NCBI RefSeq assembly: GCF_963676685.1
Contig: NC_092350.1
Coordinates: 10,106,001-10,170,000 of the forward strand
Direction of reading: 5' to 3'
DNA length: 64,000 bases
DNA from: Mytilus edulis
Lineage: Eukaryota
Below the pieces are notes generated by a model. That model ran no database searches. It was not told the DNA's origin and saw nothing but the letters and a program-made list of their open reading frames with translations. A program made the translations under genes and the position numbers. Within the stretch, counting starts at the first letter, position 1, and each line of letters opens with the position of its first letter. Below are positions 1 through 35,856 of the stretch, piece by piece.

Positions 1-2059
1 AGATCACTCAGTACTTACCTTTAAAAATTGTACTTTATCATCTGTAGAGCATGTTCCAATGACATGACATCCAGCTCTCTTGGCCCATTGTACCTACAAA
101 GGGAGATCACTCAGTTCTTACCTTTAAAAATTGTACTTTATCATCTGTAGAGCATGTTCCAATGACATGACATCCAGCTCTATTGGCCCATTGTACCTAC
201 AAAGGGAGATCACTCAGTTCTTACCTTTAAAAATTGTACTTTATCATCTGTAGAGCATGTTCCAATGACATGACATCCAGCTCTCTTGGCCCATTGTACC
301 TACAAAGGGAGATCACTCAGTTCTTACCTTTAAAAATTGTACTTTATCATCTGTAGAGCATGTTCCAATGACATGACATCCAGCTCTCTTGGCCCATTGT
401 ACCTACAAAGGGAGATCACTCAGTACTTACCTTTAAAAATTGTACTTTATCATCTGTAGAGCATGTTCCAATGACATGACATCCAGCTCTCTTGGTCCAG
501 TGTACCTACAAAGGGAGATCACTCAGTTCTTACCTTTAAAAATTGTACTTTATCATCTGTAGAGCATGTTCCAATGACATGACATCCAGCTCTATTGGCC
601 CATTGTACCTACAAAGGGAGATCACTCAGTTCTTACCTTTAAAAATTGTACTTTATCATCTGTAGAGCATGTTCCAATGACATGACATCCAGCTCTCTTG
701 GCCCATTGTACCTACAAAGGGAGATCACTCAGTTCTTACCTTTAAAAATTGTACTTTATCATCTGTAGAGCATGTTCCAATGACATGACATCCAGCTCTC
801 TTGGCCCATTGTACCTACAAAGGGAGATCACTCAGTACTTACCTTTAAAAATTGTACTTTATCATCTGTAGAGCATGTTCCAATGACATGACATCCAGCT
901 CTATTGGCCCAGTGTACCTACAAAGGGAGATCACTCAGTTCTTACCTTTAAAAATTGTACTTTATCATCTGTAGAGCATGTTCCAATGACATGACATCCA
1001 GCTCTCTTGGCCCATTGTACCTACAAAGGGAGATTACTCAGTACTTACCTTAAAAAATTGTACTTTATCATCTGTAGAGCATGTTCCAATGACATGACAT
1101 CCAGCTCTATTGGCCCAGTGTACCTACAAAGGGAGATCACTCAGTTCTTACCTTTAAAAATTGTACTTTATCATCTGTGGAGCATGTTCCAATGACATGA
1201 CATCCAGCTCTCTTGGCCCATTGTACCTACAAAGGGAGATCACTCAGTTCTTACCTTTAAAAATTGTACTTTATCATCTGTAGAGCATGTTCCAATGACA
1301 TGACATCCAGCTCTCTTGGTCCATTGTACCTACAAAGGGAGATCACTCAGTTCTTACCTTTAAAAATTGTACTTTATCATCTGTAGAGCATGTTCCAATG
1401 ACATGACATCCAGCTCTCTTGGCCCATTGTACCTACAAAGGGAGATCACTCAGTTCTTACCTTTAAAAATTGTACTTTATCATCTGTAGAGCATGTTCCA
1501 ATGACATGACATCCAGCTCTCTTGGTCCATTGTACCTATAAAGGGAGATCACTCAGTTCTTACCTTTAAAAATTGTACTTTATCATCTGTAGAGCATGTT
1601 CCATTGACATGACATCCAGCTCTCTTGGTCCATTGTACCTACAAAGGGAGATCACTCAGTTCTTACCTTTAAAAATTGTACTTTATCATCTGTAGAGCAT
1701 GTTCCAATGACATGACATCCAGCTCTCTTGGTCCATTGTACCTACAAAGGGAGATCACTCAGTTCTTACCTTTAAAAATTGTACTTTATCATCTGTAGAG
1801 CATGTTCCAATGACATGACATCCAGCTCTCTTGGCCCATTGTACCTACAAAGGGAGATCACTCAGTTCTTACCCTTAAAAATTGTACTTTATCATCTGTA
1901 GAACATGTTCCAATGACATGACATCCAGCTCTCTTGGTCCATTGTACCTACAAAGGGAGATCACTCAATTCTTACCCTTAAAAATTGTACTTTATCATCT
2001 GTAGAGCATGTTCCAATGACATGACATCCAGCTCTTTTGGCCCATTGTACCTACAAGGG
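1..2059 (-). repeat. 103-bp tandem array, 20 copies in window; each unit = 75-nt PTGR3 exon 7 + 28-nt GT..AG spacer
   Basis: Units start at 1, 104 ... 1958 (exact 103 period); minus-strand spacer gtaagaactgagtgatctccctttgtag. Confidence 0.95.
1976..2050 (-). CDS. PTGR3: PTGR3 exon 7 (first copy in transcript order; gene continues beyond the left edge)
   Basis: cttgtag| VQWAKRAGCHVIGTCSTDDKVQFLR |gtaaga; matches the ZADH2 CHVIGTCS segment. Which of the 20 copies is actually used cannot be seen from sequence. Confidence 0.75.
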
Positions 2060-2708
2060 AGATAACTCTGGTAACAATCACAATCAGTCCTGCACAATAT
2101 TTATATGCAATTATATATTGAATTCCATTGAAAATTTAATATAGCTTTTCTATTATCAGCCTTAGATGGGAAACTTAATAGGTATTGAGTGGTAGGGATG
2201 AGCCTCTGGGATAAGTCAATATCTTTATTTTTGCTAAGATATGATATCGGCAAGAAAGGTAGCTGATTAAATTGTAACTATCTGATTCTACTGTATATGT
2301 CAGACATTTTTTTAATCAATTTTTATTCCATGAAAAAGACTAATCTCAATCTAAAAAAAATCCTATATTTTCTTATAAAGCCAATTAAAATCTTTAATTT
2401 TACTTTTTTTTAAAATAAAATCATGGAACTTTTTTTCCAATAAAATCATGGAGTAAACATCTTTAGTAAAAGATGGTTGCTTTCACTGAGTTTTTAAACA
2501 TTTTTTGTTTATGTTCATGTATAACATCAAACAATACAATTATATTTCTTAACATACTAATAAAAATATTTTAGTTGAATTTATTTGTTTTTGTTCACAA
2601 TTGTGTCAAGCTTTCAGTTTCTGTATTTTAAAGTTTTGACTCTGAATGCATCCCAAATCATTTTTCCACAAAAACATGAGTAAAATGTTATTGTACTAAA
2701 CTACTCAC

Positions 2709-2737
2709 AGCAAACTGTCCAGTGCCCCCTGCAGCAG
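2709..2737 (-). CDS. PTGR3: PTGR3 exon 6 (NADPH-binding AAAGGTG motif)
   Basis: tttcag| (A)AAGGTGQFA |gtgagt; 29 nt, phases consistent with both neighbours. Confidence 0.88.
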
Positions 2738-3240
2738 CTGAAATAAAATATACATAATCATTTTTACATCCTTTTCGATATCATGTTGACATTGCTCCTT
2801 TCTGATATTTCTCATGTAAGTAAAAGAAGTTAAAGTGGCAAGTAAAACATAATAGTTATTCTAAATACTCCTGATATTACTCAAAGGGCATTAGATTAAA
2901 GAAACACAATATTTGGTAACTATCAATAGGAATGAAATGAGAATTCTCACAAATCCATTTCAGCATTTTCAATGTAACCATCTTTAATCTGAATTTCTTG
3001 ATGGAAAATATGATTTATATGATTGATTTTTGTTTGATTAACATTCAGAGGCATCAGTTAATGGATTTAGTGGAGTTACTTGTATCATGAAATGGCTGCT
3101 TTTATTAATTTGAATAATTAGACTGGGTAAGTATCACAATAATGACATGCATCGTAATAATAAGTCTCAAATTTCTGATTTCAATTTCACAGAACTTTAA
3201 TACCCACACAGTAATTTCTAAACTAAGAGTTCTTTAATAC

Positions 3241-3280
3241 CTGTAACAAGAACTGTTTCTCCAGCTTTTAACTCTCCATA
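3241..3280 (-). CDS. PTGR3: PTGR3 exon 5
   Basis: tttcag| YGELKAGETVLVT+G |gtatta; 40 nt. Confidence 0.88.
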
Positions 3281-4534
3281 CTGAAATTGATTAAAATAAA
3301 TCAGTTAGTGCTGTTAAACAAAAGAATGCAATTTGACCTACTATCAAGTTAATTAATTCAAATGAAATGTTTAATTGTTGATAACTGATATGCCTTAATC
3401 CTCCATAGAATGATGTATTTTTCCATATGAGAACACAAAAAAAGGTCTAATCTAACAAGCCATATATAATGTATGGATTCATTTATTTATATACTCTGTA
3501 ATAGATTTAGCCCAAGAAACCCACCCACTACATGTAATAATAATTAATCAGTTACTGTTTTAACTTTGGTATCTTGTACAGTTTATGTCACTGTGCAGAA
3601 CAATGTCAACAAATATATCACACTAGTTTCCTCCTCTCCATTTTAAAGGTGAAACTTCAATATCATTGATATGATGTTAACAGTACAATCAATTGCTAAG
3701 GGGAGATAATCAACTATTCTGACTGATTAAACAAAAGTTAGCTCCACTGGCATACACCACATCACCCGTATAATTGGGACAAGCTTAAGTGACTTGATCG
3801 CATAGTTTTTTTTTCTGTTTAGTTACAAAGGTAGGATTCTTTTCTGTTATGATTTTAAACACTAAAACAGTAATATTGTCTGATACAATCTGGCTTTATA
3901 AAGTTGTACTTGGATCATGTGACTCCAAACTTATTAGGGAAATATTAATCTTCCTGTTATCCAATGTGACGGTTTATCAAAGTAAGGCTGCAGTTCCAAA
4001 ATCAGTATTTGATTTAACACCCCGAAACCACTGTTTTCCTAAAATTTTGCTCTATTTTCGGTACATTTGACATTGACCTTAAACAACGTAAAATCAATTG
4101 GGATATTTTGCTCATTATATTTGACCTTTTACCCAAGTAATGCTGATATCCCATATGAAGTATTTGATTCAGCACTCTAAATCCATATTATATTTGAGGA
4201 GCAGATTTCTCTGTGCCTATTCAAGTTTTATATTTGTATCTTGCTATTTTAATCTTGTGGGTGAAACATGAATTACTGTAAATTCATAAATTATTGAGAG
4301 GATTTTATTGATACAAATAATACGGCGGAATGAGTCACAAAATATTAAGACCTTACATTCATAAATAAAAATATTTTCCTGAAATTGTAAGTACAGGCAA
4401 TTATTTCTGAACTTAACAGTATTTGAGTTAGCATTCCGAAACAAATCTCACTGACATACTGACAGTCCTAAATATATATAAGTCCTCCCGGCTTCTTTGA
4501 AGTGTTTTTGCAGCAATAGTTGAAATTTAGTTAC

Positions 4535-4633
4535 CTTATCTAAAGCAATGGCAGCAGTGGCTCCACTAACTTGTAAAGGGAGATAATCAGCTGACACTCT
4601 TGGTAATTTGAGCAAATTTCTCTCTGAGATATT
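4535..4633 (-). CDS. PTGR3: PTGR3 exon 4
   Basis: tttcag| NISERNLLKLPRVSADYLPLQVSGATAAIALDK |gtaact; 99 nt. Confidence 0.88.
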
Positions 4634-4767
4634 CTGAAAAATGAGTATTAAACAAAATAAATACTACTTTAACTCAAAAAAATTTGTCAAAATATTTTGA
4701 CAGTAGAAAAATCTAGATTTATCACTTTCCCTAACTTTAACAAATAATTGCTCATTAGACTTCCTAG

Positions 4768-5158
4768 AAACTAGAGGCTCTAAAGAGCCTGTGTCGCTCA
4801 CCTTGGTATATATGTGAATATTAAACAAAAGAAACAGATGGATTCATGACAAAATTGTGGTTTGGTGATGGTGATGTGTTTGTACATCTTACTTTACTGA
4901 ACATTCTTGCTGCTTACAATTATCTCTATCTATAATGAACTTGGCCCAATGAAAATTGTTAAAAATTGACTATAAAGGACATTAACTCCTTAGGGGGTCA
5001 ATTGACCATTTCAGTCATGTTGACTTATTTGTAAATCTTACTGTGCTGAACATTATTGCTTTTTACAGGTTATCTCTATCTCTACTAGTATTCAAGATAA
5101 TAACCAAAAACAGCAAAATATCCTTAAAATTACCAATTTAGGGGCAGGTGAGCTAAAA
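4768..5158 (-). mobile_element. Non-autonomous Helentron-like (HINE/DINE-1 type) element, internally deleted
   Basis: Subterminal inverted repeats gctcacct/aggtgagc and terminal hairpin aggctc-taaa-gagcct; same family as 61177-62045 in opposite orientation. Confidence 0.65.
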
Positions 5159-5659
5159 AGAGTGGTACATTCAAATCTTACATTCACAACAGCAAAATAT
5201 ATTCAGCAAATTAGTATCTTCAAATCTAAACAAAGCTTCTTTCATATTTTCTTCGGTAATAAAATAGTTTAGTATGATTTTGTTCTGTATTACAAATGCA
5301 TTATTTTTTTTAAAACACAATTTCAAATTAATTTTATTTCCCAATCATGTAGTTGTAAATGCATGCATCTGATGTTCAATAGTTGTCGTTTGTTGATGTG
5401 GTTCCTAAGTGTTTTTCTTTTTTATATATAGATTAGACCTTTGGTTTTCCCATTTGAATGGTTTTACACTAGTAATTTTTTTATGGGCCCTTTATAGCTT
5501 GCTGTTCTGTGTGAGCCAAGGCTCCGTATTGAAGACCGTACCTTGAACTATAACGGTTTAGTTTTATAAATTGTGATTTGGATGGAGAGTTGTCTCATTG
5601 GCACTCATACCACATCTTCCTATATCTAATTAATACTCAAACTGAAATAACCATTTTAC

Positions 5660-5755
5660 TTTGTATTCACTAAAAGCACCAAATTGTGAATAAGTAACTG
5701 GCTGGCCAATTCTGAGAGAAGCTCCAGGTCCAACGGCTGCCACTTCACCTACAGC
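5660..5755 (-). CDS. PTGR3: PTGR3 exon 3
   Basis: ttgcag| AVGEVAAVGPGASLRIGQPVTYSQFGAFSEYK |gtaaaa; 96 nt, in frame. Confidence 0.9.
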
Positions 5756-6950
5756 CTGCAAAATAACAGGATTATAGTGAAATACAGTCATCACCTGCAG
5801 CCTGGAAAATAAAGGATTACAGTAAAATGTAGTCATCACCTACAGCCTGCAAAATAACAGGATTATAGTGAAATATAGTCATCACCTACAGCCTCTAAAA
5901 TCACAGGATTATAGTGAAATACAGTCATCACCTGCAGCCTGCAAAATAAAGGATTATAGTAAAATGTAGTCATCACCTACAGCCTGCAAAATAACAGGAT
6001 TATAGTGAAATACAGTCATCACCTACAGCCTGCAAAATAACAGGATTATAGTGAAATACAGTCATCACCTACAGCCTGCAAAATAACAGGATTATAGTAA
6101 AATATAGTCATAACATGCAGCCTGGAAAATAACAGGATTATAGTGAAATACAGTCATCACATGCAGCCTGCAAAATAACAGTATTATAGTAAAATATAGT
6201 CATCACATGCAGCCTGGAAAATAACAAGATTATAGTGAAATACAGTCATCACATGCAGCCTGCAAAATAACAGGATTATAGTGAAATACAGTCATCACCT
6301 GCAGCCTGCAAAATAACAGGATTATAGTAAAATATAGTCATCACATGCAGCCTGGAAAATAACAGGATTATAGTGAAATACAGTCATCACCTGCAGCCTG
6401 CAAAATAACAGTATTATAGTAAAATATAGTCATCACATGCAGCCTGGAAAATAACAAGATTATAGTGAAATACAGTCATCACATGCAGCCTGCAAAATAA
6501 CAGGATTATAGTGAAATATCATCACCTACAGCCTGGAAAATAACAGGATTATAGTAAAATATAGTCATCACCTACAGCTTGAAAAATCAAAGAGTATAGT
6601 GAAATACAGTCATCACATGCAGCCTGGAAAATAAAGGATTATAGTAAAATATAGTCATCACCTACAGCTTGAAAAATCAAAGAGTATAGTGAAATACAGT
6701 CATCACATGCAGCCTGGAAAATAAAGGATTATAGTAAAATACAGTCATCACATGCAGCCTGGAAAATAAAGGATTATAGTAAAATATAGTCATCACCTGC
6801 AGCCTGGAAAATAAAAGATTATAGTAAAATGTAGTCATCACCTACAGCTTGAAAAATCAAGGAGTATAGTTAAATATGGTCAACACATAAGGCCTGCAAA
6901 ATAAAGGATTGCAGTAAAATAAAATCATCAGTACAGCCTGAAAAATGAAG
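5746..6950 (-). repeat. 46-bp minisatellite, ~26 copies, made of the PTGR3 exon 3 acceptor + first ~10 exon nt
   Basis: Minus-strand unit atgactgtatttcactataatcctgttattttgcag|gctgtaggtg; copies degrade away from the exon. Confidence 0.93.
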
Positions 6951-7506
6951 GACAATCTAAAAAGTTATTATTATACATGTATATTAAAGTTAACCCAAAA
7001 ATAATCATATAGACTTCAATTCATAGCATTATACACCTTATCACAATTGAGTCCAATCGGGAAAAAACAGTCATTTTAAAAACTACCTGTTTGGGTCAAA
7101 AGTTAAGCAAAAAAAAGGTCATCAGTAAAGAGCTGAGAGAGGAAAAAATTTAGAAAGAGATCTCAAGAAACTTTGATGGAGAATGATCCACTTTTTCAAA
7201 AAAGTATTTTGTTTGAAGTGTTTAGATGGTTTAAACAGGTCTCATCAAAAAGTATCATGAATGGTGCATTGTTTAAACAGGGTCCCAGATAATTTCAACT
7301 CATGAACTGAATGAAAAAGTTGTGTAATTTTAGATCTAACACTGAATGGATGTAGCAATTAGGTGTATCAAACACTAGTTTTTGGTCAGACAATCTTAAA
7401 ATGACAACTCATACATGTATGGCACTTAACAGTTTTTGAAAAGAAAACAAGAGAAAGATATGCTTATTACAACAGTGAACACAAATTTAGTTTTATCTTT
7501 ACAAAC

Positions 7507-7594
7507 CTCAAATCCGCAATCAAAGGGAGGTTTCACAGTTGTATCATATCTGCCTGCAGTGTAGTTTATATCTGATGCATTTATTCCAACAAAT
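7507..7594 (-). CDS. PTGR3: PTGR3 exon 2
   Basis: ttatag| [29 protein letters not shown] |gtttgt; characteristic ZADH2 GINASD..GRY..PF..GFE motif. Confidence 0.92.
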
Positions 7595-8835
7595 CTATAA
7601 ATAAAAAATGTAAAACATGAACATGTGAGGTTCCTGGAACTCAAAATTTTCACTGAAATAACGAAATTGATAGCAGCTTTAATAGATCACTATGAGGTGA
7701 GGGTTTGGGTCATTGTTGAAGGCCATACACTACAGTAAATTAAAGTTGTTAACTTCTATGCCATTTGATCTATGTTGGGGAGTTGTCTCATTGGCAATCA
7801 TACCAAATCTTATTATTTTTATAATCAAGATTAACTTTGTTAACAGTTGTGTAATCTCAATGAACAATCCTTTCATAAAAAAAAATTAAAAAAAAGTATG
7901 ATTGACAATGAGATAATAGTTTATCAGGTTGGGAAGATCTCAAAACATGGTCAATATCCCCATTTATTAATATAATACCTCAAATATGGTCTTACAGTTT
8001 TTTTTGTTTTTTGTTTGGTCCTCTGCTTGAACATGTACAGAATATATTTTTTTTCATCAATTTGGGAATCAGAATATATTTTTTTAGAAAAATACCATAC
8101 CCACTCCTGCCTTTTAAAGTTCAATGATTGTTCTATCTGAACTTATTATTTTGTTTTAGACAAAAATTATATGTAGAACATTCATCCTGGACATGCATGA
8201 ACTATTTGCCACTGGATGTTAAGCAACCAACAATCAATCAAAATTTAGGACATAGTCTTGGTATAAAGCTGGCATTTACGGTAGCGTCTTTCTCATATTA
8301 CATTCAATTTCTTAAATCTTCAATTCTAAAGTTCCGTGTTTTCATGTTTCAGTCAGATTTTTAACACGTGAAGCGCTTAAACGCCATCAATCAAAATTAT
8401 TTAGTCAAAATATTACACTAGAAGGTATGGGGAAAATCTTAATTCAGAATTTTTTTTTTATCCTCTGCTTGATCAGAGTATTTTTTTCTCTCATCAATTT
8501 GGGAATTAAAATATGTTTATAAGAAAATACTAGTACAAAAAATTATGACGTCTAGGAAGGCTATTTTAAATTTTTGCTTTGATACTTTCTTGCCACTTGT
8601 CAAAGCAAAAAAAATACAGTATCCCCTCCTGCCATTTGAACATGTGGAAGTTTAATGATCTTTCCCTAAACATTTTCCATCTGAACTTATTGTTTCATTT
8701 TAGACAAAACTATATGTAGGACATTCAGCCTGAATATGCATGAAATATTTGCCACTGGACATTAAGCAACCAACATTGTTGAACAATCAATCAATATATT
8801 CAACATAGTCTTGGTATAAAGCTGGCTTTTAAGAA

Positions 8836-8975
8836 AGTCCAAATAATTATGACGTCTTGGAACGCTATTTTAAATTTTTGCTTTTACGCCTTCATGGGAC
8901 GATGTAAGCGTTACAGTAAGGCGTCAAAGAATAAAATTATAATAGCCTTTCAAAATGTCATTATTATTTGGACTA
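8836..8975. mobile_element. Palindromic MITE (TIR agtccaaataattatgacgtc)
   Basis: Ends agtccaaataa...ttatttggact; the same family forms the outer layer at 51537-53056. Confidence 0.65.
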
Positions 8976-9081
8976 GAGTTTAAGGTAGGGCCTTCCTCGT
9001 ATTATAGAAAATCTCATAGAGTTTTATTGTCATTTGATTTTGTAAATAAAATATAGGGAAGAGACGTTTTAAATTAAACAC

Positions 9082-9218
9082 CTGTTTTTCACAAGAACTT
9101 CACCAGCTCCAGGATTTGGCAAACTTTCTTGCGTAATTTTGACAACATCACGGAATTTCTGACTTATTTTTGTTACAACGAGTTTCCTCATCGTAGAAGG
9201 TAACTGTCTAGATGCCAT
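9082..9218 (-). CDS. PTGR3: Prostaglandin reductase 3 / ZADH2-like MDR oxidoreductase, coding exon 1
   Basis: ATG at 9218; MASRQLPSTMRKLVVTKISQKFRDVVKITQESLPNPGAGEVLVKN(R); donor AG|gtgttt; phase 2 joins exon 2. Confidence 0.9.
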
Positions 9219-11580: not shown

Positions 11581-11601
11581 AAGACTTTCTAAGATAACAA
11601 T

Positions 11602-13119: not shown

Positions 13120-14242
13120 ATAACAATACGAATACTAAAAATCTGTGACTAAAAATAAAGCATATAGGTACAGTTTTCAATTTGTTAGCGGGCATGACGT
13201 AAAACAGCGAATCAAAGAATTCAACTTTATTTATAACTCATGTAGGACAATGCTGTTGATTAAAAAATACTCCATTCCAGGAGCTTTTGTTTTCTAAATA
13301 ATTAATATTACCAATAATTGATAAGTTCCAGTTCGACAGGTTCAAACAGAAGGATTTGATAGCAGAGAAAACCGTGTATCTTATAATCGGCATGACTTTA
13401 TCAGATAACAATACTAATACTAAAAAAGGCTTGCACATAGTTATATACTTTAATTCAGTCACGGACCCGCGATATCACGGCCGGGTGTGTTCTAGTATAA
13501 TATATTTGTCTATCTGTAGGTTTGGGATGATGTTTGGTGCATGTTCCTATAAATGAATCTGCCCCACATCTTCTCAATTTCTTTCTCTGACAATCCTAAA
13601 CTTTTGGTCCTGAAATAGGGGAATTGGGTTTAAAAAGCTAATTTCCTAGGGGAAGTGCTGCCCAATTTTTTTTTAGGTTTAGATTTTAAAAGGGGTAAAC
13701 TAAAAGTTATCTCGGGGAGATTTTTAAAGTGGGTAATCAATCTCTTTCTATTAAATCGCAAACTTTTGTCTGGTAACTGGAAATTGAGTTTTATATATTA
13801 ATATAAAAAAAAAAAATTAAAAAAATCCCTACCTACCGTCCCTTCAAAATTTCAAGGGGGTGATTGGAAACACAACATTATTTTTTTTAGGCCTTATACT
13901 GGTTTGTGCTACGATCATATTCACTGTAAAATATCCCTACACATGCACACAGTTGCTTATCTGTGCTACACTACAAAAGTAGTGGTACTCCAGATAGTGG
14001 AAGAAAGAATAAAGAAGAAGAATTTAGCTGGTAATTTGAGCTATACAATGTAACTTGTCTCATCTCTTCTTTTATGGTTATGCCATATTTTTTTGAGGAG
14101 TTGTCATCTTCTTGTTCTTATGGTGTCCATTTCAACACAGTATTGTTTACAATTTTGTAAACCCCCAATCTATGCACCTAACCTTATTGAAATTTGAAAA
14201 TCTGTTTATCTTGACTTGATCTGTCCAGTTTGAACTTTTAAC

Positions 14243-14495
14243 GTGGGTCTCATTGGGTTCTAAGCGTGACGTGTGATTGCTGATTTTTTGTAAGCGTGAC
14301 TGTATGAAATACAAATTATTGTGCTGTGAAAACCGGAAATGATGTCTAGGGGGACATGAGAAATTACAAAAAAATGAGAATTGCTTACATGTACAGAATT
14401 TAATTATTGTACGTACATTAGTGTAAACGGGATACTAGAATATATGTCAAAACAGTAAGCAGGATACGGGATCAGAACCCCCCAATGAGACCCCC
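14243..14495. mobile_element. MITE
   Basis: TIR gggtctcattggg / cccaatgagaccc. Confidence 0.6.
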
Positions 14496-15170
14496 TTAAA
14501 CGTCAAACAACAATCTCTTTACCAAATGTTGTGACGTCAGAAAATTTCTATTATAGGAACTTTTGTATGTAATGTCCAGTAATTGCAGATGAATAGCTAT
14601 AAGGTGTATATACATGTATGGGGATACTACTTGTATTGAGTGATAGCCCTTCTAAAAAGGGATATTATTGTTTGGTTACTGTATTTGCATCAAGATCATG
14701 GCAGTATAATGAGGTTTTTTTTATAATGGTCATTTTACAATGTTACATGGCAGATGCCTATCAGTTGGCTAAAAGTGTATCAAACCTTTAAATTTCTCTT
14801 AGTCCCTAAAAATGTGTGACAATTTAGTCACCACTCTATATCTTCTAATAAAAATAAACTGTTATGTCTAAAATTGTCAAACAAAAATATATTGTTGCAT
14901 GATAATGTTTGACATCCTTGCTCTACAGTATATTCTTAGAATTGTGTTGCAATGCTTTTAAAGGGACAGTAGAGAAATATTTTTGGGGATTAAGATAAAA
15001 AAAACAATGAGATTTCAATAACATTATAAAAATTAGAGTGAGGGTGAACCTACTCCCTGTTTCAAAGAAACATCAGATTATCGTTACATAGGTTTATATA
15101 TGCAATTTCAAATAATGCTTTGTCCACAGTGTTATCTTTATTCAAACAAATTTATATATTGTAATTTTAG

Positions 15171-15334
15171 ATTCATCAAACCTAATTATGATAGTGGTAG
15201 ACTTTTGTCTTTTACTGCTGTTCATGGTACAACATAGTGTGATGACATCAAAATCAATAAAGAAAGAGTTATGGCCCTTGTGTAAACCTCTCTACAGAAC
15301 ATTGTATACAATATCCACTTGTTTAGCTCTCCAG
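15171..15334 (+). CDS. NRM: Nurim exon 2
   Basis: ttttag| ..DFCLLLLFMVQHSVM..LYRTLYTISTCLALQ |gtttgt; nurim QHS-x-M and R-x-LY motifs. Confidence 0.92.
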
Positions 15335-15524
15335 GTTTGTACATCATTAATAATGTTTATAAGATATTCTGGTCATATTTATATTTGAAACTCTATATAA
15401 AAAATATATACAATATTCTCATTTCTTATAATTCAAGTATGGACATAAAATCTTAGAACTACTCCTTAAAATCCAGAACAAAAAATTGGGGCCACATATA
15501 TGCAAGCATTTTTTTAATGAATGC

Positions 15525-16345
15525 TAAAAACTTTTTGGATCGTATAATGGTATGATCATGATGTTGTCATCTTCTGCGTCGTCCAAGACACATTTGGTGT
15601 CCAGACAATAACTTAAGTTAAAGTGAATGGATCTCTATTTAAATTTAAAAAGAAGGTTCATTACCACAAAAGGAAGGTTGGGATTAAATTTGGTGACGAT
15701 GGTCCCAACCGTGTTGAAATTAGGGGCCCAAAAGGGACCCAAAACAAACATTTTTCTACTTTCAGTATATTAACTTGTGTATGAGTACATTCTTGTATTT
15801 CAATTGCTCTGAAATTGTATCACAATGTTTAATACCACAAATAGAAGGTTTGGGTTCATTTTGGGGGTTACAGTATAGTAATTAGGAACCTAAAAGGGTC
15901 CAAAAACAAGCATTTTTGTAGTTTATGGACAATAACTTGTGTTTAAGTGTATGGATCTCTCTAAAATTGTACTGCAAGGTTCCATATACTACAATGGAAA
16001 GGCTGGGGTCGAGGTTGGGGTATTGCTTTAAAGGGGGGGGGGGGGTCAAAAAGTTTGGGGGGTTCCAACTTTTTTAAGGGGTTCAATTTTTTTTTCTTTA
16101 AATTTCTCAAATTTCATATTTTTTAAAAGTTTCAAAAAGAAATCTTTAATTGCACAGTATTGCATAATAGATTTGTAAGATCTTGATATTTGTTTAGTGT
16201 CAGAAACCTATATTATGTCAAAAATTTGAACACCATTCAAATTCAGAGCTGTATCAAGCTTGAATATTGTGTCCATACTTGCCCCAACTGTTCAGGGTTC
16301 AACATCTGCGGTTGTATAAAGTTGTGCCCTGCAGAGCATCTGGTT
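15525..16345 (+). mobile_element. Helentron-like non-autonomous element with internal ~190-bp repeats
   Basis: T-rich insertion site, degenerate GTC microsatellite near the 5' end, repeated internal core (gacaataactt...ggatctct), end gagcatctggttt. Confidence 0.5.
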
Positions 16346-17013: not shown

Positions 17014-18995
17014 AAGATGTCTGTCTTAATGTCCTATCATTTACATAAGTTATATTTTTCAGACATTGATGTATTTCTGGCAGAGAACAGACATAAGTTT
17101 ATGGTTGATTAACACAGAAGATGTCTGTCTTAATGTCCTATCATTAACATTAGTTATATTTTTCAGACATTGATGTATTTCTGGCAGAGAACAGACATAA
17201 GTTTATGGTTGATTAACACAGAAGATGTCTGTCTTAATGTCCTATCATTAACATTAGTTATATTTTTCAGACATTGATGTATTTCTGGCAGAGAACAGAC
17301 ATAAGTTTATGGTTGATTAACACAGAAGATGTCTGTCTTAATGTCCTATCATTAACATTAGTTATATTTTTCAGACATTGATGTATTTCTGGCAGAGAAC
17401 AGACATAAGTTTATGGTTGATTAACACAGAAGATGTCTGTCTTAATGTCCTATCATTAACATTAGTTATATTTTTCAGACATTGATGTATTTCTGGCAGA
17501 GAACAGACATAAGTTTATGGTTGATTAACACAGAAGATGTCTGTCTTAATGTCCTATCATTAACATTAGTTATATTTTTCAGACATTGATGTATTTCTGG
17601 CAGAGAACAGACATAAGTTTATGGTTGATTAACACAGAAGATGTCTGTCTTAATGTCCTATCATTAACATTAGTTGTAATTTTCAGACATTGATGTATTT
17701 CTGGCAGAGAACAGACATTAGTTTATGGTTGATTAACACAGAAGATGTCTGTCTTACTGTCCTATCATTAACATTAGTTGTATTTTTCAGACATTGATGT
17801 ATTTCTGGCAGAGAACAGACATTAGTTTATGGTGGATTAACACAGAAGATGTCTGTCTTACTGTCCTATCATTAACATTAGTTGTATTTTTCAGACATTG
17901 ATGTATTTCTGGCAGAGAACAGACATAAGTTTATGGTTGATTAACACAGAAGATGTCTGTCTTAATGTCCTATCATTAACATTAGTTGTATTTTTCAGAC
18001 ATTGATGTATTTCTGGCAGAGAACAGACATAAGTTTATGGTTGATTAACACAGAAGATGTCTGTCTTAATGTCCTATCATTAACATTAGTTGTATTTTTC
18101 AGACATTGATGTATTTCTGGCAGAGAACAGACATAAGTTTATGGTTGATTAACACAGAAGATGTCTGTCTTAATGTCCTATCATTAACATTAGTTGTATT
18201 TTTCAGACATTGATGTATTTCTGGCAGAGAACAGACATAAGTTTATGGTCGATTAACACAGAAGATGTCTATCTTACTGTCCTATCATTAACATTAGTTA
18301 TATTTTTCAGACATTGATGTATTTCTGGCAGAGAACAGACATTAGTTTATGGTTGATTAACACAGAAGATGTCTGTCTTAATGTCCTATCATTAACATTA
18401 GTTGTATTTTTCAGACATTGATGTATTTCTGGCAGAGAACAGACATAAGTTTATGGTTGATTAACACAGAAGATGTCTGTCTTAATGTCCTATCATTAAC
18501 ATTAGTTGTAATTTTCAGACATTGATGTATTTCTGGCAGAGAACAGACATAAGTTTATGGTTGATTAACACAGAAGATGTCTGTCTTACTGTCCTATCAT
18601 TAACATTAGTTGTATTTTTCAGACATTGATGTATTTCTGGCAGAGAACAGACATAAGTTTATGGTTGATTAACACAAAAGATGTCTGTCTTAATGTCCTA
18701 TCATTTACATTAGTTGTATTTTTCAGACATTGATGTATTTCTGGCAGAGAACAGACATAAGTTTATGGTTGATTAACACAAAAGATGTCTGTCTTAATGT
18801 CCTATCATTTACATTAGTTGTATTTTTCAGACATTGATGTATTTCTGGCAGAGAACAGACATAAGTTTATGGTTGATTAACACAGAAGATGTCTGTCTTA
18901 ATGTCCTATCATTTACATTAGTTGTATTTTTCAGACATTGATGTATTTCTGGCAGAGAACAGACATTAGTTTATGGTTGATTAACACAGAAGATG
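17014..18995 (+). repeat. 104-bp tandem array, 19 copies of the nurim exon 3 acceptor + first 60 exon nt
   Basis: Exon-start positions 17063, 17167 ... 18935 (exact 104 period); only the last copy continues into the rest of the exon. Confidence 0.95.
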
Positions 18996-19102
18996 CTCCT
19001 CTAACCTCCCTTTTCTTCACATTAGTACAAATATTTTGTTGGATGATTCTGTTTCTGGAGAATACATTGACAGAGCCGTTCTTTCTAATTGGAATCAAGC
19101 AG
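18935..19102 (+). CDS. NRM: Nurim exon 3
   Basis: tttcag| TLMYFWQ..LWLIN..WMILF..FLIGIKQ |gttagt; 168 nt; matches the nurim G-L/I-KQ motif. Confidence 0.9.
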
Positions 19103-19134
19103 GTTAGTAAAGTGGTTCACTGAAAATATTTTAA

Positions 19135-19378: not shown

Positions 19379-20254
19379 TTAGTGTGAACCTGCGGCTGTC
19401 CATTCTTAAAATACAAAAATATAATTTTTAATAGAACATATTCATGATATTTAGGTACAACAGTCAAAATAGTACAGTAATTTCTTTTTATCATTTTCTT
19501 TTAAGTTTTAGATGATAATTTGTGTGTATTTGTGTTAACAGATGTTAAAATTACAAAATGCTTTATTGCAAATGAATGTTTTGAAAAGCTTTTAACAAAA
19601 TATTACATTTAACAGGAGTTTTTTTCTGAGATGATATTATAAGGGCCCAGTATATAGAATGCAGGATCCCTATGATTTTCACTATACTTGTGTGTTCAAT
19701 ATGAATTGGATCAAGCTTATCAGTTCAAATAGGAGTCAGTTTCACCAAAAAAAAAGAGTAACATCCATGATTTTTTTATAAGGATAAAAAAAAAATAGAG
19801 CTTTTTTAAAAGTGTGCAATAAAATACAGATTTTGTTCGACAGCTTAAATTGTTCTGCAACTGTATTTCTCCTTTTGAAGGAAAAGATTCTTGGCTTATT
19901 AAGCCCTGTAAAATCTCGAAAAATGAATGTACATTGAAAATCACTTATGAAATCAATCTAAAGACTGAAGAATCTGGTAAAAAAAGGGTCATATCTGAAT
20001 TCCTGGTTATTTAATAACCTGGCAGGTATTTAAATATCCTGTGTCAGAATTGAAATTTATGGGTGTCTTCCTCAGGATAGGCATCAGTTGACAGGCAGGG
20101 ATCATTGAACAAGTAATGCAGCCTATAGTAACTGTTGATCTTAAATTGTCGATCTCTATCAAAATTAATAAAGCAGACAAGACAATGGTGTTAACTCTTG
20201 TTCCTGTTAACATAATTATTATAATACTTATTTTTGTTTCACTTCTATTTTCAG

Positions 20255-25517: not shown

Positions 25518-26573
25518 TAATAAAATTAACGGTACCAATTTTCTTGCACCAGATGCGCATTTCGACAATACATGTCTCTTCAGTGATGCTCGTGGCCAAA
25601 ATATTTGAAATCCAAAGCTTAAATAAAAGATGAAGAGCTATAATCCAAAAGGTCCAAAAAGTATAGCCAAATCCGTGAAAGGAATCAGAGCTTTGCATGA
25701 GGGAGATACATTCCTTAATTTATAATAATTTCTATTATTTTGTAACAGTAAATTTTAATAACACAAAAAATCCGTATTTTCATGCCAGTACCGAAGTACT
25801 GGCTACTGGGGTGGTGATACCCTCGGGGACTAATAGTCCACCAGCAGAGGCATCGACCCAGTGGTAGTAATAAAATTAACGGTACCAATTTTCTTGCACC
25901 AGATGCGCATTTCGACAATACATGTCTCTTCAGTGATGCTCGTGGCCAAAATATTTGAAATCCAAAGCTTAAATAAAAGATGAAGAGCTATAATCCAAAA
26001 GGTCCAAAAAGTATAGCCAAATCCGTGAAAGGAATCAGAGCTTTGCATGAGGGAGATACATTCCTTAATTTATAATAATTTCTATTATTTTGTAACAGTA
26101 AATTTTAATAACACAAAAAATCCGTATTTTCATGCCAGTACCGAAGTACTGGCTACTGGGGTGGTGATACCCTCGGGGACTAATAGTCCACCAGCAGAGG
26201 CATCGACCCAGTGGTAGTAATAAAATTAACGGTACCAATTTTCTTGCACCAGATGCGCATTTCGACAATACATGTCTCTTCAGTGATGCTCGTGGCCAAA
26301 ATATTTGAAATCCAAAGCTTAAATAAAAGATGAAGAGCTATAATCCAAAAGGTCCAAAAAGTATAGCCAAATCCGTGAAAGGAATCAGAGCTTTGCATGA
26401 GGGAGATACATTCCTTAATTTATAATAATTTCTATTATTTTGTAACAGTAAATTTTAATAACACAAAAAATCCGTATTTTCATGCCAGTACCGAAGTACT
26501 GGCTACTGGGGTGGTGATACCCTCGGGGACTAATAGTCCACCAGCAGAGGCATCGACCCAGTGGTAGTAATAA
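25518..26573 (-). mobile_element. Retrozyme: 3 apparently identical tandem 350-bp units, each with a hammerhead ribozyme
   Basis: Exact 350-bp period; minus-strand hammerhead core in each unit. Confidence 0.9.
25546..25589 (-). ncRNA. Minimal type I hammerhead ribozyme (further copies 25896-25939, 26246-26289)
   Basis: GCAUCA-CUGAAGA-GACA(uguau)UGUC-GAAA-UGCGCAUC^UGGUGC: intact core, stem I GCAUCA/UGGUGC, stem II GACA/UGUC, palindromic helix III. Confidence 0.92.
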
Positions 26574-26630
26574 CAGTAGTTAGATAATATTGTGTCAAAA
26601 TAAAGTTTTATTTTTCTGGTGTGAAGTGAA

Positions 26631-28313
26631 ATGGCTTCGTCATCAAGTCTGACTGCACAAATTCACATCTGTGGGTTTTGTAAAGTTGAAAAAATACCTG
26701 AATGGACATGTTTTGATTGCGACCAACCGATATGCTATGAATGTAAAAGATTTCATTTATGGGATTTGAAAAAGAGATATCATAACATTTTGAGGGCTAT
26801 TTCATTGGTCCCGGATAGTAGTTCGAAAACAAAAACAAATCTGAAAGACATCAGTTGTGCAGATCATGTAGATCGCATTGTACTAATTATTGTCTTGAAT
26901 GCAAAACACTTGTTTGTCCAGAATGTTTGTCTGTTAGTTCTTGTCATTTGGCACATAGGAATAAAACTATAGATAAAATACATGAGGAATCCCTGGAAGA
27001 GCTTGTGGTATTAGAGAATCACATAAAACAAAACATTCTGCCCTGTGTCAAAGGAAAACTTGATTCATTAGATGCATGGAAGGATAAACATAAAATGAAG
27101 TTTCAAGAAGAAAAGAAGAAAATTGAAGAACATGCAAATGAGTTGAGGCAGCTAGTAACAAAGTTTGAGGGTACATTGATCGAAGAGTTTGGAAAAACTT
27201 TTGATGCAAATGCAGATGCTATTTCCAGAGAACAGGACAAAGTAAACCAGCTTCAGGAGGAATTGAATGTAAAAATCAAACTGATAAAACAATCAAAGGT
27301 CAAAGACAATATACTACAAATCCAAAAGGATGTTATGTATTTGTCTCCCAATCCTGTAGACTATGACAAACCTTTATTGATACCAAAGGAAACAAAACAA
27401 TTCTCTAAAAGTCAAAAGATTTCAAAAGAATGTGACTTTGGACATCTACTTACAGTTCCTTTGAAAGGAGAACCAGACACTGAAATTAAAGCTTCAAAAT
27501 CGTATGATTTTGAGAAAAACCTTTTTGTTAACCACAGCTCGCTGGCCATATGTAAAGATGGTACAATTTTAGCTTCAGATGAAAATTGTTGTTATGAACT
27601 GAAACCAGATAAAAGCCCAAGATTAATAGGCGGGATGAAAAAAGTTATTGACATGTTTTTTTTAGAGTCAAAGAAGCTTGTATTTGCTGTTGAAAAAAAT
27701 CGTGCCATCCAGGTCAAAAATGAACATGATGAAATCCAAACTTTTTACACATTACCAGATTCAAAAAACTTTGTTCTAGCCCTTTGTGTGAGTAGAGAAG
27801 GACATATTATGATTCTTTATCTAGAATCTACTCCAACATTCGTGATGAACAGTGAATTTTCAAAGATGCATATCAAATGTTTATCGCAAGATGGAGTTTT
27901 AGTGAAAACTATAAAATGTGAAGAGAAAGTTTTATTGAAAAAAGAGTCTTTAATGTCTGGTTTTCTGTACAAATTCAAAATAACAGAGAACATTAATGGA
28001 AATATTTGTGTACCTACTTTTTTCCAAGATGAAGTTAACGTTTTTAGCCAGGATGGGAAGTTAATTCGGAAGGAACAAATAGGGAAACCGATGGATGTAG
28101 AGTCCACATCATTAGGAAGTATCATTGTATTAAGCTTAACTGGCCAGGTTGTTATTCTGAATTCTAATGGAAAGTTTGTGAAAAACTTCGCTCTGAAAGA
28201 TACTCTACATTGTTCACCTATGAACTTTTACAGTTTTTGTCTAAAAAAACCAAGATCTTGTCTTTGTTAGTGAGGGTAAAATGCATATTGTTCAGTTTTA
28301 CAATGAACATTGA
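26631..28313 (+). pseudogene. Intronless TRIM-like gene (2 B-boxes, coiled coil, NHL-like beta-propeller); two 1-nt frameshifts, so a pseudogene or an assembly error
   Basis: B-box1 CGFC..CFDC..CYEC..H..H; B-box2 CADH..[fs ~26879]..YCLEC..CPEC..HLAH; heptad-rich helix; propeller-like C-terminus; second shift at the A7 run 28243-28249. Confidence 0.8.
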
Positions 28314-33578: not shown

Positions 33579-34139
33579 CTAGAAATATAAACAAGTAATA
33601 AATGTGAGAAGTAACACAATTTTTGAGAAACTACATTGTAAATGTTTACTTCAGGTGTTTAAACTTTAGCGTTTTCTTTTGTCTTTTCAAATTCATCAAT
33701 CATGTAGCCAACAATTTCTTAACAAACCAAATGAAATATCATTAATTTATCTAACATGTAGAAAAAAAAATTGATGAAGTAGCACATGCTTTCAGTGAAA
33801 GTAAAACATGTTAAATAGTAAAGGGGACAACCATTAGATATTCTAATGGGGGACGCAGAGGTTTGAACATTTTTTCTGCACACCATTTATTTTTCAGTCA
33901 TGGTGATAAAGGATAATTTTTGGAGACATCCTTTATGAATATTTGTTTTAATCTTTCATGCAAAACTATTTTCAAAAATGTGTGGGTCGGGATAAATATC
34001 CCAACTTTTCCTTCCATTAAAGAAACATTCAAGTTACACAATTATATACATGTTTATTACTATACTTCTCAAGAAAAAAAATAATATTGAAACTTCATAA
34101 GTCGTACAAAGTGTTTGATTCTATCTGTTCTAAAAACTA

Positions 34140-34285
34140 AAATTATGGATAAAGAAAGATAACTCTATAAACAACAATTATGGACAAAGGAAGATAACTC
34201 TATAAACAACAATTATGGACAAAGGAAGATAACTGTTTAAGCAACAATTATGGAAAAAGGAAGATAACCCTTAAAACATCAATTA
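34140..34285. repeat. 36-bp minisatellite, ~4 copies
   Basis: aattatggacaaaggaagataactctataaacaac repeated. Confidence 0.8.
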
Positions 34286-34446
34286 TAGACACAGGAAGAT
34301 AACTCCAACTCAGAGTATTTTCTTCTTAATTTCCTGATGCAATCCTGTTTTTCATTTTAAAACATTGATTATTCTCTACTGTATTTGAAAGACAAATCCT
34401 GGTATCAAAACCATAGTAAAGGGAGATTATTCCCGTAAATTATTAC

Positions 34447-34519
34447 CTGTTTGTGGGATAATTTCTGTTTTATCTTCCTCTAACATGCACAGAAATGTAG
34501 TGTTGCCACCTTCAAAATT
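34447..34519 (-). CDS. 2OG-Fe(II) dioxygenase exon
   Basis: ttgtag| NFEGGNTTFLCMLEEDKTEIIPQT+G |gtaata. Confidence 0.9.
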
Positions 34520-35625
34520 CTACAAGTGTAATAAGTTACAAAAAATACAATGATTCACAGATTAAAACTATTATAATCCAAACAAATTTTGTATGCTTTC
34601 TATAGAAAGTCAACATTGTTCCCAAGTATAACGTATCGTCTTTTATAAATCACAAAGAGACAACAACCTGACCATAGATCAGAAAGCAGCCACAGGCCAC
34701 CAATGGGTCTTCAACACCGCGAGAGAATATGCAATAGGAGGTTGGTCAAAGCTGTCCCCTAAAAAATCATGTACTGGGGACTGTTATATACGACTAATGG
34801 TCATTTTGATATCTCACAAAAAAGGAAACTCAAAGATGGAGCCCTAAAAATTATTTTACTGCAAAGAATTATCTAGTAATTCAGTGTACATATTTAATTT
34901 AATGTGTTCTATATTTTCCGTTGTGAATAATTCATTTGATTTTCTCAAGCTTCATTTGCTCTCTTGTTTCATACCCATCAACTCCATTCTATTTTATTTG
35001 CAATGTTTTTACACAATTTCGTTTTCTCCAAAAAGAAAAGAACTTTAAGCAACCAACAATCAATCCATAATGATAAGTATATTACATTTTTGTAAATAAC
35101 ATTGTACATGAATCCCCAAACAAATGAAATAACACAGAAAAAAATATAATGTTATTAATGTAACAGTAAAATCACAATCAATATATCATGTTACTAAAAA
35201 CAAATATATTTGTTTGTATATATTTGTTACATATCGGTTTTTCTAAAGATATACTGAGAACTCTCACAAGTATGATTTCCCAGTAAGAATAGATTACTTA
35301 TAAAATTGGAACTGCCTACAAAAAACATTAGGATGCCAAAAGTAATGATCGAACAAATTCTGAATGTTAAAAAAAGGATAAATGACAAAAAATGTATTTT
35401 ATAGTATAATCAGTACCATCTGCAGCTTAATATATTACATAATTTGCTTTATAGATCACATGCAACAATAATTTCAACCAATGTTCAAGCTAAATATGTA
35501 CATATATTTACATTATAATACTTGTTTTCATTGTAATTCGATTTTAATCAAATATATGCACTTAATTAAGAACTGAATTGATTTGATATGGAAACCAATA
35601 GATTAAGATATATATTATGACTTAC

Positions 35626-35740
35626 TTGATTAAGATACACCTGTACGGACATGTAACTTCGGTCTCCATCCTCATTCATGTAAGATCCATCTAAATGGGG
35701 GTGGAAATTGTCACCCGGATTATACCGCAACACTCTTATT
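35626..35740 (-). CDS. 2OG-Fe(II) dioxygenase exon with HxD motif
   Basis: ttacag| IRVLRYNPGDNFHPHLDGSY..SYMSVQVYLNQ |gtaagt. Confidence 0.92.
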
Positions 35741-35856
35741 CTGTAAATATATATGTACACTCGATATTTCTCAACACTTTTATTCTGTAAATATATATGT
35801 ACACCCAATATACCTCAACACTCTTATTCTGTAAATATATATGCAGATATGTACAC
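35728..35856 (-). repeat. 44-bp triplication of the dioxygenase HxD-exon acceptor
   Basis: tttacag|aataa(g/a)agtgttg with the acceptor G at 35829, 35785 and 35741. Confidence 0.88.

What the first reader, a model, noticed from the sequence alone, without database searches (positions are those of the whole stretch)
1..35856. Recurrent pattern: tandem arrays nucleate on 3' splice sites in all three spliced genes
Seen: four unrelated arrays (103 bp x20, 46 bp x~26, 104 bp x19, 44 bp x3) each contain an authentic acceptor and exon start. That is 4 of the 14 acceptors identified, although exon junctions are a tiny share of the window. In the three partial-exon arrays only the last copy continues into the exon, so the coding sequence is preserved. 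Inference: either a mutational process targets intron/exon boundaries (for example splicing-, lariat- or R-loop-linked repair, or reverse transcription by the local Penelope/retrozyme machinery), or such arrays are selectively tolerated or used to tune splicing. I do not know of this being described as a genome-wide system.
Basis: partly seen in the sequence, partly recalled or inferred. Interest (0 to 1): 0.9.

Follow-up and report, generated by a model that had tools for sequence, protein, structure and literature searches.

The report
Tandem arrays copying mussel splice junctions
In three neighbouring blue-mussel genes, short stretches of DNA that straddle an exon edge have been copied head-to-tail 3 to 71 times, filling introns with intact spare splice sites that the cell ignores. 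This is a striking natural test of splice-site choice, but most likely a tolerated by-product of ordinary minisatellite growth rather than a dedicated system.

Summary
All four arrays exist, and each carries a real acceptor plus exon start:
- PTGR3 exon 7: the whole 75-nt exon with both splice sites, about 71 copies.
- PTGR3 exon 3: 46 bp x26.
- A nurim-like exon: 104 bp x19.
- A 2OG-oxygenase-like exon: 44 bp x3.

RNA reads join the upstream nurim exon only to the last acceptor copy. PTGR3 transcripts carry one exon copy.

- **Local origin:** the two units searched (arrays 2 and 3) occur nowhere else in the genome.
- **Breakpoints:** they lie 20-49 nt into the intron and 11-55 nt into the exon, at short direct repeats, not at splice signals.
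- **Growth:** array 1 grew by block duplication.
- **Enrichment in the window:** four of nine arrays on acceptors beats random seeding (P about 3e-4), but the window was chosen after the fact.
- **Control sample:** in my 44 exon-centred control loci, 2 of 11 arrays span junctions, both on donors, against about 0.9 expected.

So there is no acceptor preference. A tenfold excess is disfavoured, and a two- to fourfold excess stays open.

The scan had already noted this pattern on other DNA of this genome. The closest precedent is the human F7 IVS7 minisatellite (PMC1557585).

The parts
1..2068 (-). Array 1, the window part: 20 of about 71 copies of a 103-bp unit. The unit is about 22 nt of intron 6's 3' end with the acceptor, the whole 75-nt PTGR3 exon 7, the donor GTAAG, and a few nt of intron 7. 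The array continues 5.2 kb beyond the window start, to G000:C7:10100770.
   Evidence: All scored copies keep AG and an open 25-codon frame. The donor reads CT instead of GT in 3 copies, and the terminal copy lacks its own donor. Spacers between exon copies are 28 nt.
5745..6946 (-). Array 2: 26 copies of a 46-bp unit made of 35 nt of intron 2's 3' end plus the first 11 nt of PTGR3 exon 3. Distal copies are the most decayed.
   Evidence: Every copy keeps an AG at the acceptor place. The unit is unique to this locus.
5660..5755 (-). PTGR3 exon 3 (AVGEVAAVGPGASL...), joined to the last copy of array 2.
   Evidence: exact match to residues 76-107 of P0003. The same junction FDCGFE|AVGEV is seen in P0098 and the transcript-derived proteins.
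2706..9218 (-). The other PTGR3 exons in the window: E1 9081-9218, E2 7507-7596, E4 4535-4633, E5 3242-3280, E6 2706-2738. Exons 8-12 lie upstream of the window, in L003/L004.
   Evidence: Exon 2 also matches solved PTGR3/ZADH2 structures.
15169..15334 (+). Nurim-like exon whose donor (15334|GT) is spliced across array 3.
   Evidence: the joint, plus contig record 4, which covers 15169-15334.
17014..18995 (+). Array 3: 19 copies of a 104-bp unit made of 49 nt of intron 3' end plus the first 55 nt of the next nurim-like exon. That gives 18 decoy acceptors and the real one, all TTTTCAG|ACATTGATG.
   Evidence: The unit is unique to this locus. A 6-nt direct repeat AAGATG sits at both unit ends.
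18935..19102 (+). Nurim-like exon (TLMYFWQRTD...IGIKQ), joined to the last copy of array 3.
   Evidence: 15 reads join 15334 to 18935, and a contig piece ends at 19102. Nurim is the best Atlas cluster for the gene's last exon. That is a lead, not proof.
35721..35843 (-). Array 4: 2.8 copies of a 44-bp unit made of 20 nt of intron 3' end plus the first 24 nt of the exon. That gives two decoy acceptors and the real one (TTTACAG|AATAAG).
35641..35740 (-). Exon of a 2OG-Fe(II) oxygenase-like gene (IRVLRYNPGDNFHPHLDG...), joined to the last copy of array 4. The upstream exon ends at 36245 (GAG AG|GTATGT).
   Evidence: The frame is continuous across the junction. No RNA evidence.

Best explanation
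Each array is a minisatellite born on the spot.

**Origin.** A 44-104 bp piece of the gene's own DNA that happened to straddle an exon edge was duplicated in tandem. The event was a DNA-level slip or unequal exchange between short direct repeats.

**Growth.** The arrays then grew by further unequal exchange, including multi-unit block duplications.

**Geometry.** Because the unit straddles the acceptor, every extra copy lies on the intron side and exactly one copy stays joined to the rest of the exon.

**Splice choice in the partial-exon arrays.** Splicing uses that exon-contiguous copy. The likely reason is that splice sites are paired across the shortest exon. Use of a decoy also gives an early stop codon and decay of the transcript.

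**The whole-exon array.** In PTGR3 exon 7 the 28-nt spacers are too short to act as introns, so neighbouring copies cannot both be included. The mRNA carries one copy.

**Overall.** The arrays are tolerated passengers in a repeat-prone stretch of a repeat-prone genome. They are not a splice-site-targeted system.

**Shown versus inferred.** Shown: local origin of arrays 2 and 3, anatomy of the units, block growth, use of the last acceptor for the nurim-like gene, and one exon copy in PTGR3 transcripts. Inferred: the slippage mechanism, exon-definition proximity as the reason for the choice, and decay of mis-spliced RNA.
For: - **Local origin.** The units of arrays 2 and 3 occur only at their own locus in 1.37 Gb.
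- **Exon parts are real coding sequence.** They are shared with orthologues.
- **Position of the junction in the unit varies.** The exon share of the unit is 24%, 53% and 55% here, and about 70% and 88% in control arrays L061 and L068. This is what random straddling predicts.
- **Direct repeats at unit ends.** AAGATG in array 3 and GGGTG in array 4.
- **Block duplication in array 1.** Identity peaks at shifts of 22, 18, 13 and 9 units.
- **Gradient in array 2.** The oldest copies lie far from the exon.
- **RNA for the nurim-like gene.** 15 reads join 15334 to 18935. No decoy joint was listed. Read depth in the array is at most 0.46, against 11.4 in the exon.
- **Cost of using a decoy.** Use of the next-to-last decoy gives a stop after 36 codons.
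- **PTGR3 proteins.** Those from RefSeq, from four other Mytilus species and from assembled transcripts are 352 aa with one exon-7 copy.
- **Control loci.** 2 of 11 arrays span junctions, both on donors, against about 0.9 expected. At 88 known exon edges I saw 1, against 0.4-1.2 expected.
- **Precedent.** The human F7 IVS7 minisatellite shows that identical pseudo-sites next to the real site stay silent (PMC1557585).
Against: - Within this window, 4 of 9 arrays on acceptors is far above random seeding (P 2.8e-4; 3.9e-3 for any junction). Array density here is about three times that of my control loci. I have no explanation for this local cluster.
- Earlier notes of this scan list many more such arrays in the genome, and one follow-up claims a tenfold excess. 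I could neither reproduce nor refute that figure with power. My control is small: the 95% range of the excess is roughly 0.3 to 8.
- All 26 copies of the older array 2 still keep an AG at the acceptor place. This could hint at constraint or gene conversion.
- Splicing to decoys followed by decay was not measured.
Confidence: 0.6

Rival explanations
1. A mutational process in Mytilus seeds tandem duplications preferentially at exon-intron junctions. One example would be replication slippage or break repair at sites where co-transcriptional splicing stalls the polymerase or leaves RNA-DNA hybrids. Junction arrays would then be much more common than random placement predicts.
For: - The in-window excess.
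- Three different genes are hit within 36 kb.
- Two further junction arrays turned up among only 11 arrays in unrelated control loci.
- Many similar notes exist elsewhere in this genome, with a claimed tenfold excess. Those are unchecked leads.
Against: - Breakpoints are not tied to any splice signal.
- At 88 known control exon edges I saw 1, against 0.4-1.2 expected.
- A tenfold excess would have given about 7-9 junction arrays in the control, where 2 were seen.
- Both sides of exons are hit, so the process is not acceptor-specific.
- The window was picked because of the pattern.
Confidence: 0.25
2. The arrays are used. Decoy acceptor arrays would tune expression by diverting transcripts to decay or by acting as stepping stones for long-intron removal. 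The 71-copy exon array would be a mutually exclusive exon cluster that yields PTGR3 variants.
For: - All decoys are intact.
- Array-1 copies differ at a few residues (A/T, K/N, Q/H, V/L), and all keep open frames.
- RefSeq isoform X3 uses copy 2, which has a unique signature.
- The terminal copy, which continues into the original intron, is broken by an insert, so array copies are now needed.
Against: - Copies are 97-98% alike, so intact frames and sites are expected without any selection.
- Acceptors in arrays 2-4 are not followed by a donor (AG|GC, AG|AC, AG|AA), so they are not ratchet sites.
- All transcript-derived proteins carry the same canonical exon.
- No decoy use is seen in RNA.
- The four arrays differ in age and sit in unrelated genes.
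Confidence: 0.08
3. The arrays, or their lengths, are assembly artefacts, and the cluster is chance.
Against: - Array 1 is mirrored in gene models from an older M. edulis assembly (P0003, P0096) and from M. galloprovincialis (P0097, P0217), all of which string or vary exon-7 copies.
- RNA reads from another sample land at low depth inside array 3, and the splice joint matches the assembled coordinates.
- The chance probability is low.
Confidence: 0.04

Closest known systems
Human F7 intron 7 37-bp minisatellite (Borensztajn et al. 2006, PMC1557585)
   Same: [quoted passage not shown] The site contiguous with the exon is chosen.
   Different: F7 is a single locus on the donor side with a few copies. 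Here there are acceptor-side arrays of 3-26 copies, a whole-exon array of about 71 copies, several arrays in one 36-kb stretch, and more elsewhere in the genome. Copy-number polymorphism was not tested here.
Tandem exon duplication and mutually exclusive exon clusters (PMC6071210, PMC5740500)
   Same: Array 1 is a run of complete, same-length, in-frame exon copies with both splice sites, of which one enters the mRNA. The very short spacers would sterically forbid inclusion of neighbouring copies.
   Different: - It has 71 near-identical copies at a 103-bp period, which is far beyond known clusters.
- There is no evidence of regulated choice or of functionally distinct variants.
- No selector RNA structures were looked for.
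- It looks like a young satellite rather than an evolved switch.
Recursive (ratchet-point) splicing sites
   Same: Introns hold extra acceptor sites in series.
   Different: A ratchet site needs a donor regenerated right after the acceptor (AG|GTRAGT). Arrays 2-4 have AG|GC, AG|AC and AG|AA. Array 1 has only a weak AG|GTACAA. No stepwise intermediates were seen.
Intron creation or sliding by tandem duplication of a segment holding splice signals (PMC3265369, PMC2891723)
   Same: Tandem duplication of a gene segment duplicates splice signals, and the transcript stays intact because the extra copy is spliced out.
   Different: In those cases a single duplication inside an exon makes a new intron. 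Here an existing junction is multiplied many times and no new intron arises.

Membership tests
Junction-spanning minisatellite (F7 IVS7 type) | The repeat unit contains an exon edge together with its splice site. | tested here: met
   Units were mapped against exon coordinates from P0003, RNA joints and frames.
Junction-spanning minisatellite (F7 IVS7 type) | Pseudo-sites are identical or near-identical to the real site. | tested here: met
   All 19 sites of array 3 share TTTTCAG|ACATTGATG. All 26 copies of array 2 keep AG.
Junction-spanning minisatellite (F7 IVS7 type) | Only the exon-contiguous site is used in mature RNA. | tested here: met
   Shown for array 3 with 15 reads and no decoy joints. 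For array 2 it follows from database and transcript proteins. Array 4 was not tested by RNA.
Junction-spanning minisatellite (F7 IVS7 type) | Copy number varies between individuals (VNTR). | not tested
Mutually exclusive exon cluster from tandem exon duplication | Tandem complete exons of equal length and frame, each with its own splice sites. | tested here: met
   The 70 copies scored, of about 71, are each 75 nt with an open frame and an AG. The donor reads CT instead of GT in 3 copies, and the terminal copy lacks its own donor.
Mutually exclusive exon cluster from tandem exon duplication | Exactly one copy is present in the mRNA. | tested here: met
   The 352-aa RefSeq, orthologue and transcript-derived proteins hold one copy. 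Models with 3-14 copies (P0003, P0096, P0097) look like prediction artefacts.
Mutually exclusive exon cluster from tandem exon duplication | Regulated choice among copies that yields distinct products. | tested here: inconclusive
   RefSeq X3 uses copy 2, but all transcript-derived proteins carry the canonical exon. No reads were laid on this array.
Recursive splicing sites | The acceptor is directly followed by a donor consensus. | tested here: not met
   Sequences after AG are GCTG, ACAT and AATA in arrays 2-4, and GTACAA in array 1.
Dispersed satellite or transposon-borne array | The unit is present at other loci of the genome. | tested here: not met
   Only the home locus matches for arrays 2 and 3. 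Arrays 1 and 4 were not searched.
Retroposed (reverse-transcribed) copies | Copies lack introns, carry poly-A tails or have target-site duplications. | tested here: not met
   Units keep intron sequence, show no poly-A at their edges, and lie in strict head-to-tail register.

The most novel reading that the evidence does not exclude
Mytilus has a junction-biased minisatellite-forming process, for instance replication slippage coupled to co-transcriptional splicing. It would make exon edges hot spots for tandem duplication. It would leave genes loaded with arrays of live decoy splice sites and spare exons, which can later rescue a gene when the original copy is hit, as with the broken terminal PTGR3 exon copy.
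Probability: 0.2. Interest if true: 0.8.

Novelty: new variant of a known kind. Interest (0 to 1): 0.52.

Why it matters
- **Splice-site choice.** These loci are natural experiments. Eighteen acceptors identical over at least 100 nt to the real one are ignored in steady-state RNA, and one of about 71 equal exon copies is picked. They give ready-made substrates for testing exon-definition proximity against first-come rules, and for measuring the share cleared by decay.
- **Annotation.** They are also a hazard for gene prediction. Two deposited M. edulis models and one M. galloprovincialis model of this gene string 3-14 exon copies into proteins of 411-651 aa instead of 352 aa.
- **Mutation bias.** If a real junction bias exists, it would be a new link between splicing and mutation.

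Tried and rejected
The age of array 1 rests only on gene models.
The planned control of several hundred exons stopped at 74 loci, of which 44 are clearly multi-exon.
- The 30 best protein-kinase loci were mostly long single-frame matches or 1.8-kb gene-fragment arrays. I left them out of the junction count.

**Searches that gave nothing useful**
- Solved-structure searches with single short exons: only PTGR3 exon 2 was informative.
- Pfam on single nurim-like exons gave nothing. The name rests on an Atlas lead and on my memory of the human protein.
- A protein search with the oxygenase-like exon found only a genomic read-through ORF.
- Rfam at gathering score found nothing in the window.
- Paper searches found no description of junction-seeded arrays as a genome-wide pattern.

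**Arrays checked and rejected**
- The 35-bp array at 34129-34305 has an acceptor-like unit but no adjoining exon.
- The 170-bp array in L043 ends about 85 nt before the acceptor.
- The 108-bp array at 62354 has no open frame.

Exons were searched one by one by reference, and database proteins were used for whole-gene mapping.
Full report
**What the window is**

The window is G000:C7:10106001-10170000 of a 1.37-Gb assembly. The contig length of 93,447,462 bases, and proteins XP_071181949-54, identify it as the RefSeq Mytilus edulis assembly. G+C is about 31% and there are no Ns.

**Check of the observation**

TRF reports all four arrays at the stated coordinates.

*Array 1.* It continues past the window start. 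The upstream flank L003 holds 50.8 more units, which gives about 71 copies over 7.3 kb.

On the minus strand each 103-bp unit reads as follows:
- about 22 nt of upstream intron ending in TTTGTAG;
- a 75-nt exon (VQWAKRAGCHVIGTCSTDDKVQFLK);
- GTAAGAAC.

Neighbouring exon copies are therefore only 28 nt apart.

A whole-library search with one exon returned P0003, a deposited M. edulis PTGR3 model. Mapping its peptides exactly onto the window and flanks gave the 12-exon gene on the minus strand. Exon 2 also matches solved PTGR3/ZADH2 structures.

*Array 2.* Exon 3 starts at 5755. Array 2 begins at 5745. Its unit is therefore 35 nt of intron end plus 11 nt of exon start, and all 26 copies keep an AG at the acceptor place.

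*Array 3.* The unit is 49 nt of intron end plus 55 nt of exon start. All 19 copies carry TTTTCAG|ACATTGATG.

*Array 4.* The unit is 20 nt of intron plus 24 nt of exon, in three copies. The upstream donor at 36245 (GAG AG|GTATGT) and the acceptor at 35740 together give ..GLNER|IRVLRYNPGDNFHPHLDG. A weak Pfam 2OG-FeII_Oxy_3 match starts at the exon start.

**RNA evidence**

Raw RNA reads and transcript contigs were laid on 13600-19500.
- In run X24, 15 reads from 6 start points join 15334 to 18935 with GT..AG ends and up to 70 nt on the shorter side. That reaches well past the 55 repeated bases, so this is the last copy.
- No joint to any of the 18 decoys reached the listing threshold.
- Depth inside the array is at most 0.46, against 11.4 in the exon.
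- Use of the next-to-last decoy would give a stop after 36 codons.

Decoy products could therefore be made and then cleared. That was not measured.

For PTGR3, one exon-7 copy and the FDCGFE|AVGEV junction are seen in all of these:
- the RefSeq isoforms;
- the orthologues in M. galloprovincialis, M. trossulus, M. californianus and M. coruscus;
- proteins from assembled transcripts, 352 aa where complete.

The older models P0003 (576 aa), P0096 (651 aa) and the M. galloprovincialis model P0097 (411 aa) string 3-14 copies, some out of frame. I read these as prediction artefacts. They also show that the array exists in independent assemblies and in a sister species.

**Anatomy and origin**

- **Local origin.** The units of arrays 2 and 3 match nothing outside their own locus. 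They are local products, not dispersed satellites or transposon cargo.
- **Position of the junction in the unit.** It varies. The exon share is 24%, 53% and 55% here, and about 70% and 88% in the two control arrays.
- **Breakpoints.** On the intron side they lie 20-49 nt from the AG. On the exon side they lie 11-55 nt in. Neither breakpoint coincides with a splice signal.
- **Direct repeats.** Array 3 is bounded by a 6-nt direct repeat, AAGATG. Array 4 is bounded by GGGTG.
- **Block duplication.** Array 1 shows identity peaks at shifts of 22, 18, 13 and 9 units.
- **Age gradient.** Array 2 has a two-unit substructure and decays away from the exon.

These are the marks of slippage or unequal exchange at the DNA level. 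I saw nothing pointing to reverse transcription: intron sequence is retained, there is no poly-A at the unit edges, and the register is strict.

That only the last copy runs on into the exon follows from geometry for any duplicated segment that straddles an acceptor.

**An unexpected detail in array 1**

The terminal copy of array 1 is the one that continues into the original intron (AAAG|GTATAATTTC). A roughly 310-bp transposon-like insert interrupts it 4 nt before its donor.

The gene must therefore now use one of the duplicated copies. RefSeq isoform X3 uses copy 2, recognisable by a unique T..R signature.

**Is it more than chance?**

*Within 1-36500.* There are 9 arrays with period 15 or more and 2.5 or more copies.
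- Unit lengths sum to 925 nt.
- The collapsed length is 30,060 nt.
- The expected number on 14 acceptors is 0.43.
- P(4 or more) = 2.8e-4. For any of 28 junctions, P = 3.9e-3.

The window was flagged because of the pattern. It also has about three times the array density of my control.

*Control.* I took exon-centred loci found by Pfam family searches of the same genome, a choice that is blind to repeats.

In the 44 clearly multi-exon loci (145 kb), 11 arrays meet the same thresholds. Two of them span junctions, and both are on the donor side:
- L061: 47 bp x3.1, at the donor of a myosin exon.
- L068: about 17 copies of the last 53 nt of a myosin exon plus GTAAGTT, with the first copy real.

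With roughly 1.3 junctions per kb, the expectation is about 0.9.

At the 88 known core-exon edges I saw 1 array. The expectation is 0.4 with strict thresholds and 1.2 with loose ones.

The control is therefore compatible with no excess and with a few-fold excess. It argues against a tenfold excess, which would have given about 7-9 where 2 were seen. It shows no preference for acceptors.

Earlier notes of this scan report the same pattern in other windows of this genome, and one follow-up claims a tenfold excess. I treat these as leads. My small sample does not support that size.

**Comparison with known things**

- **Human F7 intron 7 minisatellite.** This is the closest case. Its first unit spans the exon 7 donor, and its identical pseudo-sites are functional yet silent (PMC1557585). 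The arrays here are the acceptor-side and whole-exon counterparts, with far more copies and several per region.
- **Tandem exon duplication and mutually exclusive clusters.** Array 1 formally resembles these (PMC6071210, PMC5740500). Regulated choice is not shown.
- **Ratchet-point splicing.** It is excluded by the lack of a donor after the acceptors.
- **Intron creation by duplication.** This shares the principle that a duplicated splice signal lets the extra copy be spliced out (PMC3265369).

I found no paper that describes junction-seeded arrays as a recurrent genomic pattern. That is not proof of absence.

**Verdict**

The targeted, acceptor-specific mechanism is not supported.

The most likely reading, at about 0.6, is ordinary minisatellite birth and growth that happens to straddle exon edges and is tolerated because splicing keeps to the exon-contiguous site.

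A real junction bias of a few-fold remains possible, at about 0.2-0.25.

Noticed in passing
L003:4452-4770 (G000:C7:10100452-10100770), minus strand: A transposon-like insert of about 310 bp (TTATGCCCCACCTACGATAGTAGAGGGGCATTATG..., with an internal GTCC-type microsatellite) interrupts the terminal PTGR3 exon-7 copy 4 nt before its donor. The same element start is seen beside the array in L067.
   Followed up: partly
G000:C1:44210256-44230434 and G000:C3:19693088-19698990 (L017-L031): Kinase-domain open frames of 270-284 aa (Pkinase positions 43-257) are repeated head-to-tail at periods of about 1868 bp (at least 10 copies) and 1765 bp (at least 4 copies). These are large tandem arrays of a gene piece.
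   Followed up: no
L068:141-1120 (G000:C10:50288442-50289421) and L061:1644-1788: Donor-side junction arrays in two myosin genes. One has about 17 copies of the last 53 nt of an exon plus GTAAGTT. The other has 3 decayed copies of an exon end plus donor. The paralogous myosin loci L069, L066 and L071 lack the first array.
   Followed up: partly
window 53828-54678: A 369-bp repeat (2.3 copies) carries sub-threshold hammerhead type I matches on the minus strand at 54238-54281 and 54608-54651 (24 bits, E about 0.003), which looks retrozyme-like. The 350-bp x3 repeat at 25518-26573, whose copies are 100% identical, gave no ribozyme match.
   Followed up: partly
window 62354-63419: A 108-bp x4 array abuts the start of an open frame with a reverse-transcriptase fragment (RVT_1, E 3e-12, 62769-63419).
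   Followed up: no
window 43375-43675 and 46952-47354: Two 62-bp-unit arrays are reverse complements of each other and bracket about 3.3 kb. They may be the terminal inverted arrays of a large mobile element.
   Followed up: no
proteins P0003, P0096 (M. edulis) and P0097 (M. galloprovincialis): Deposited PTGR3 models of 576, 651 and 411 aa string 3-14 copies of the arrayed exon, some out of frame. These are likely annotation artefacts caused by the array.
   Followed up: yes
window 26822-28267, plus strand: A 482-aa open frame, cysteine-rich at its start, lies between the nurim-like and oxygenase-like genes. It has no Pfam match above threshold.
   Followed up: no
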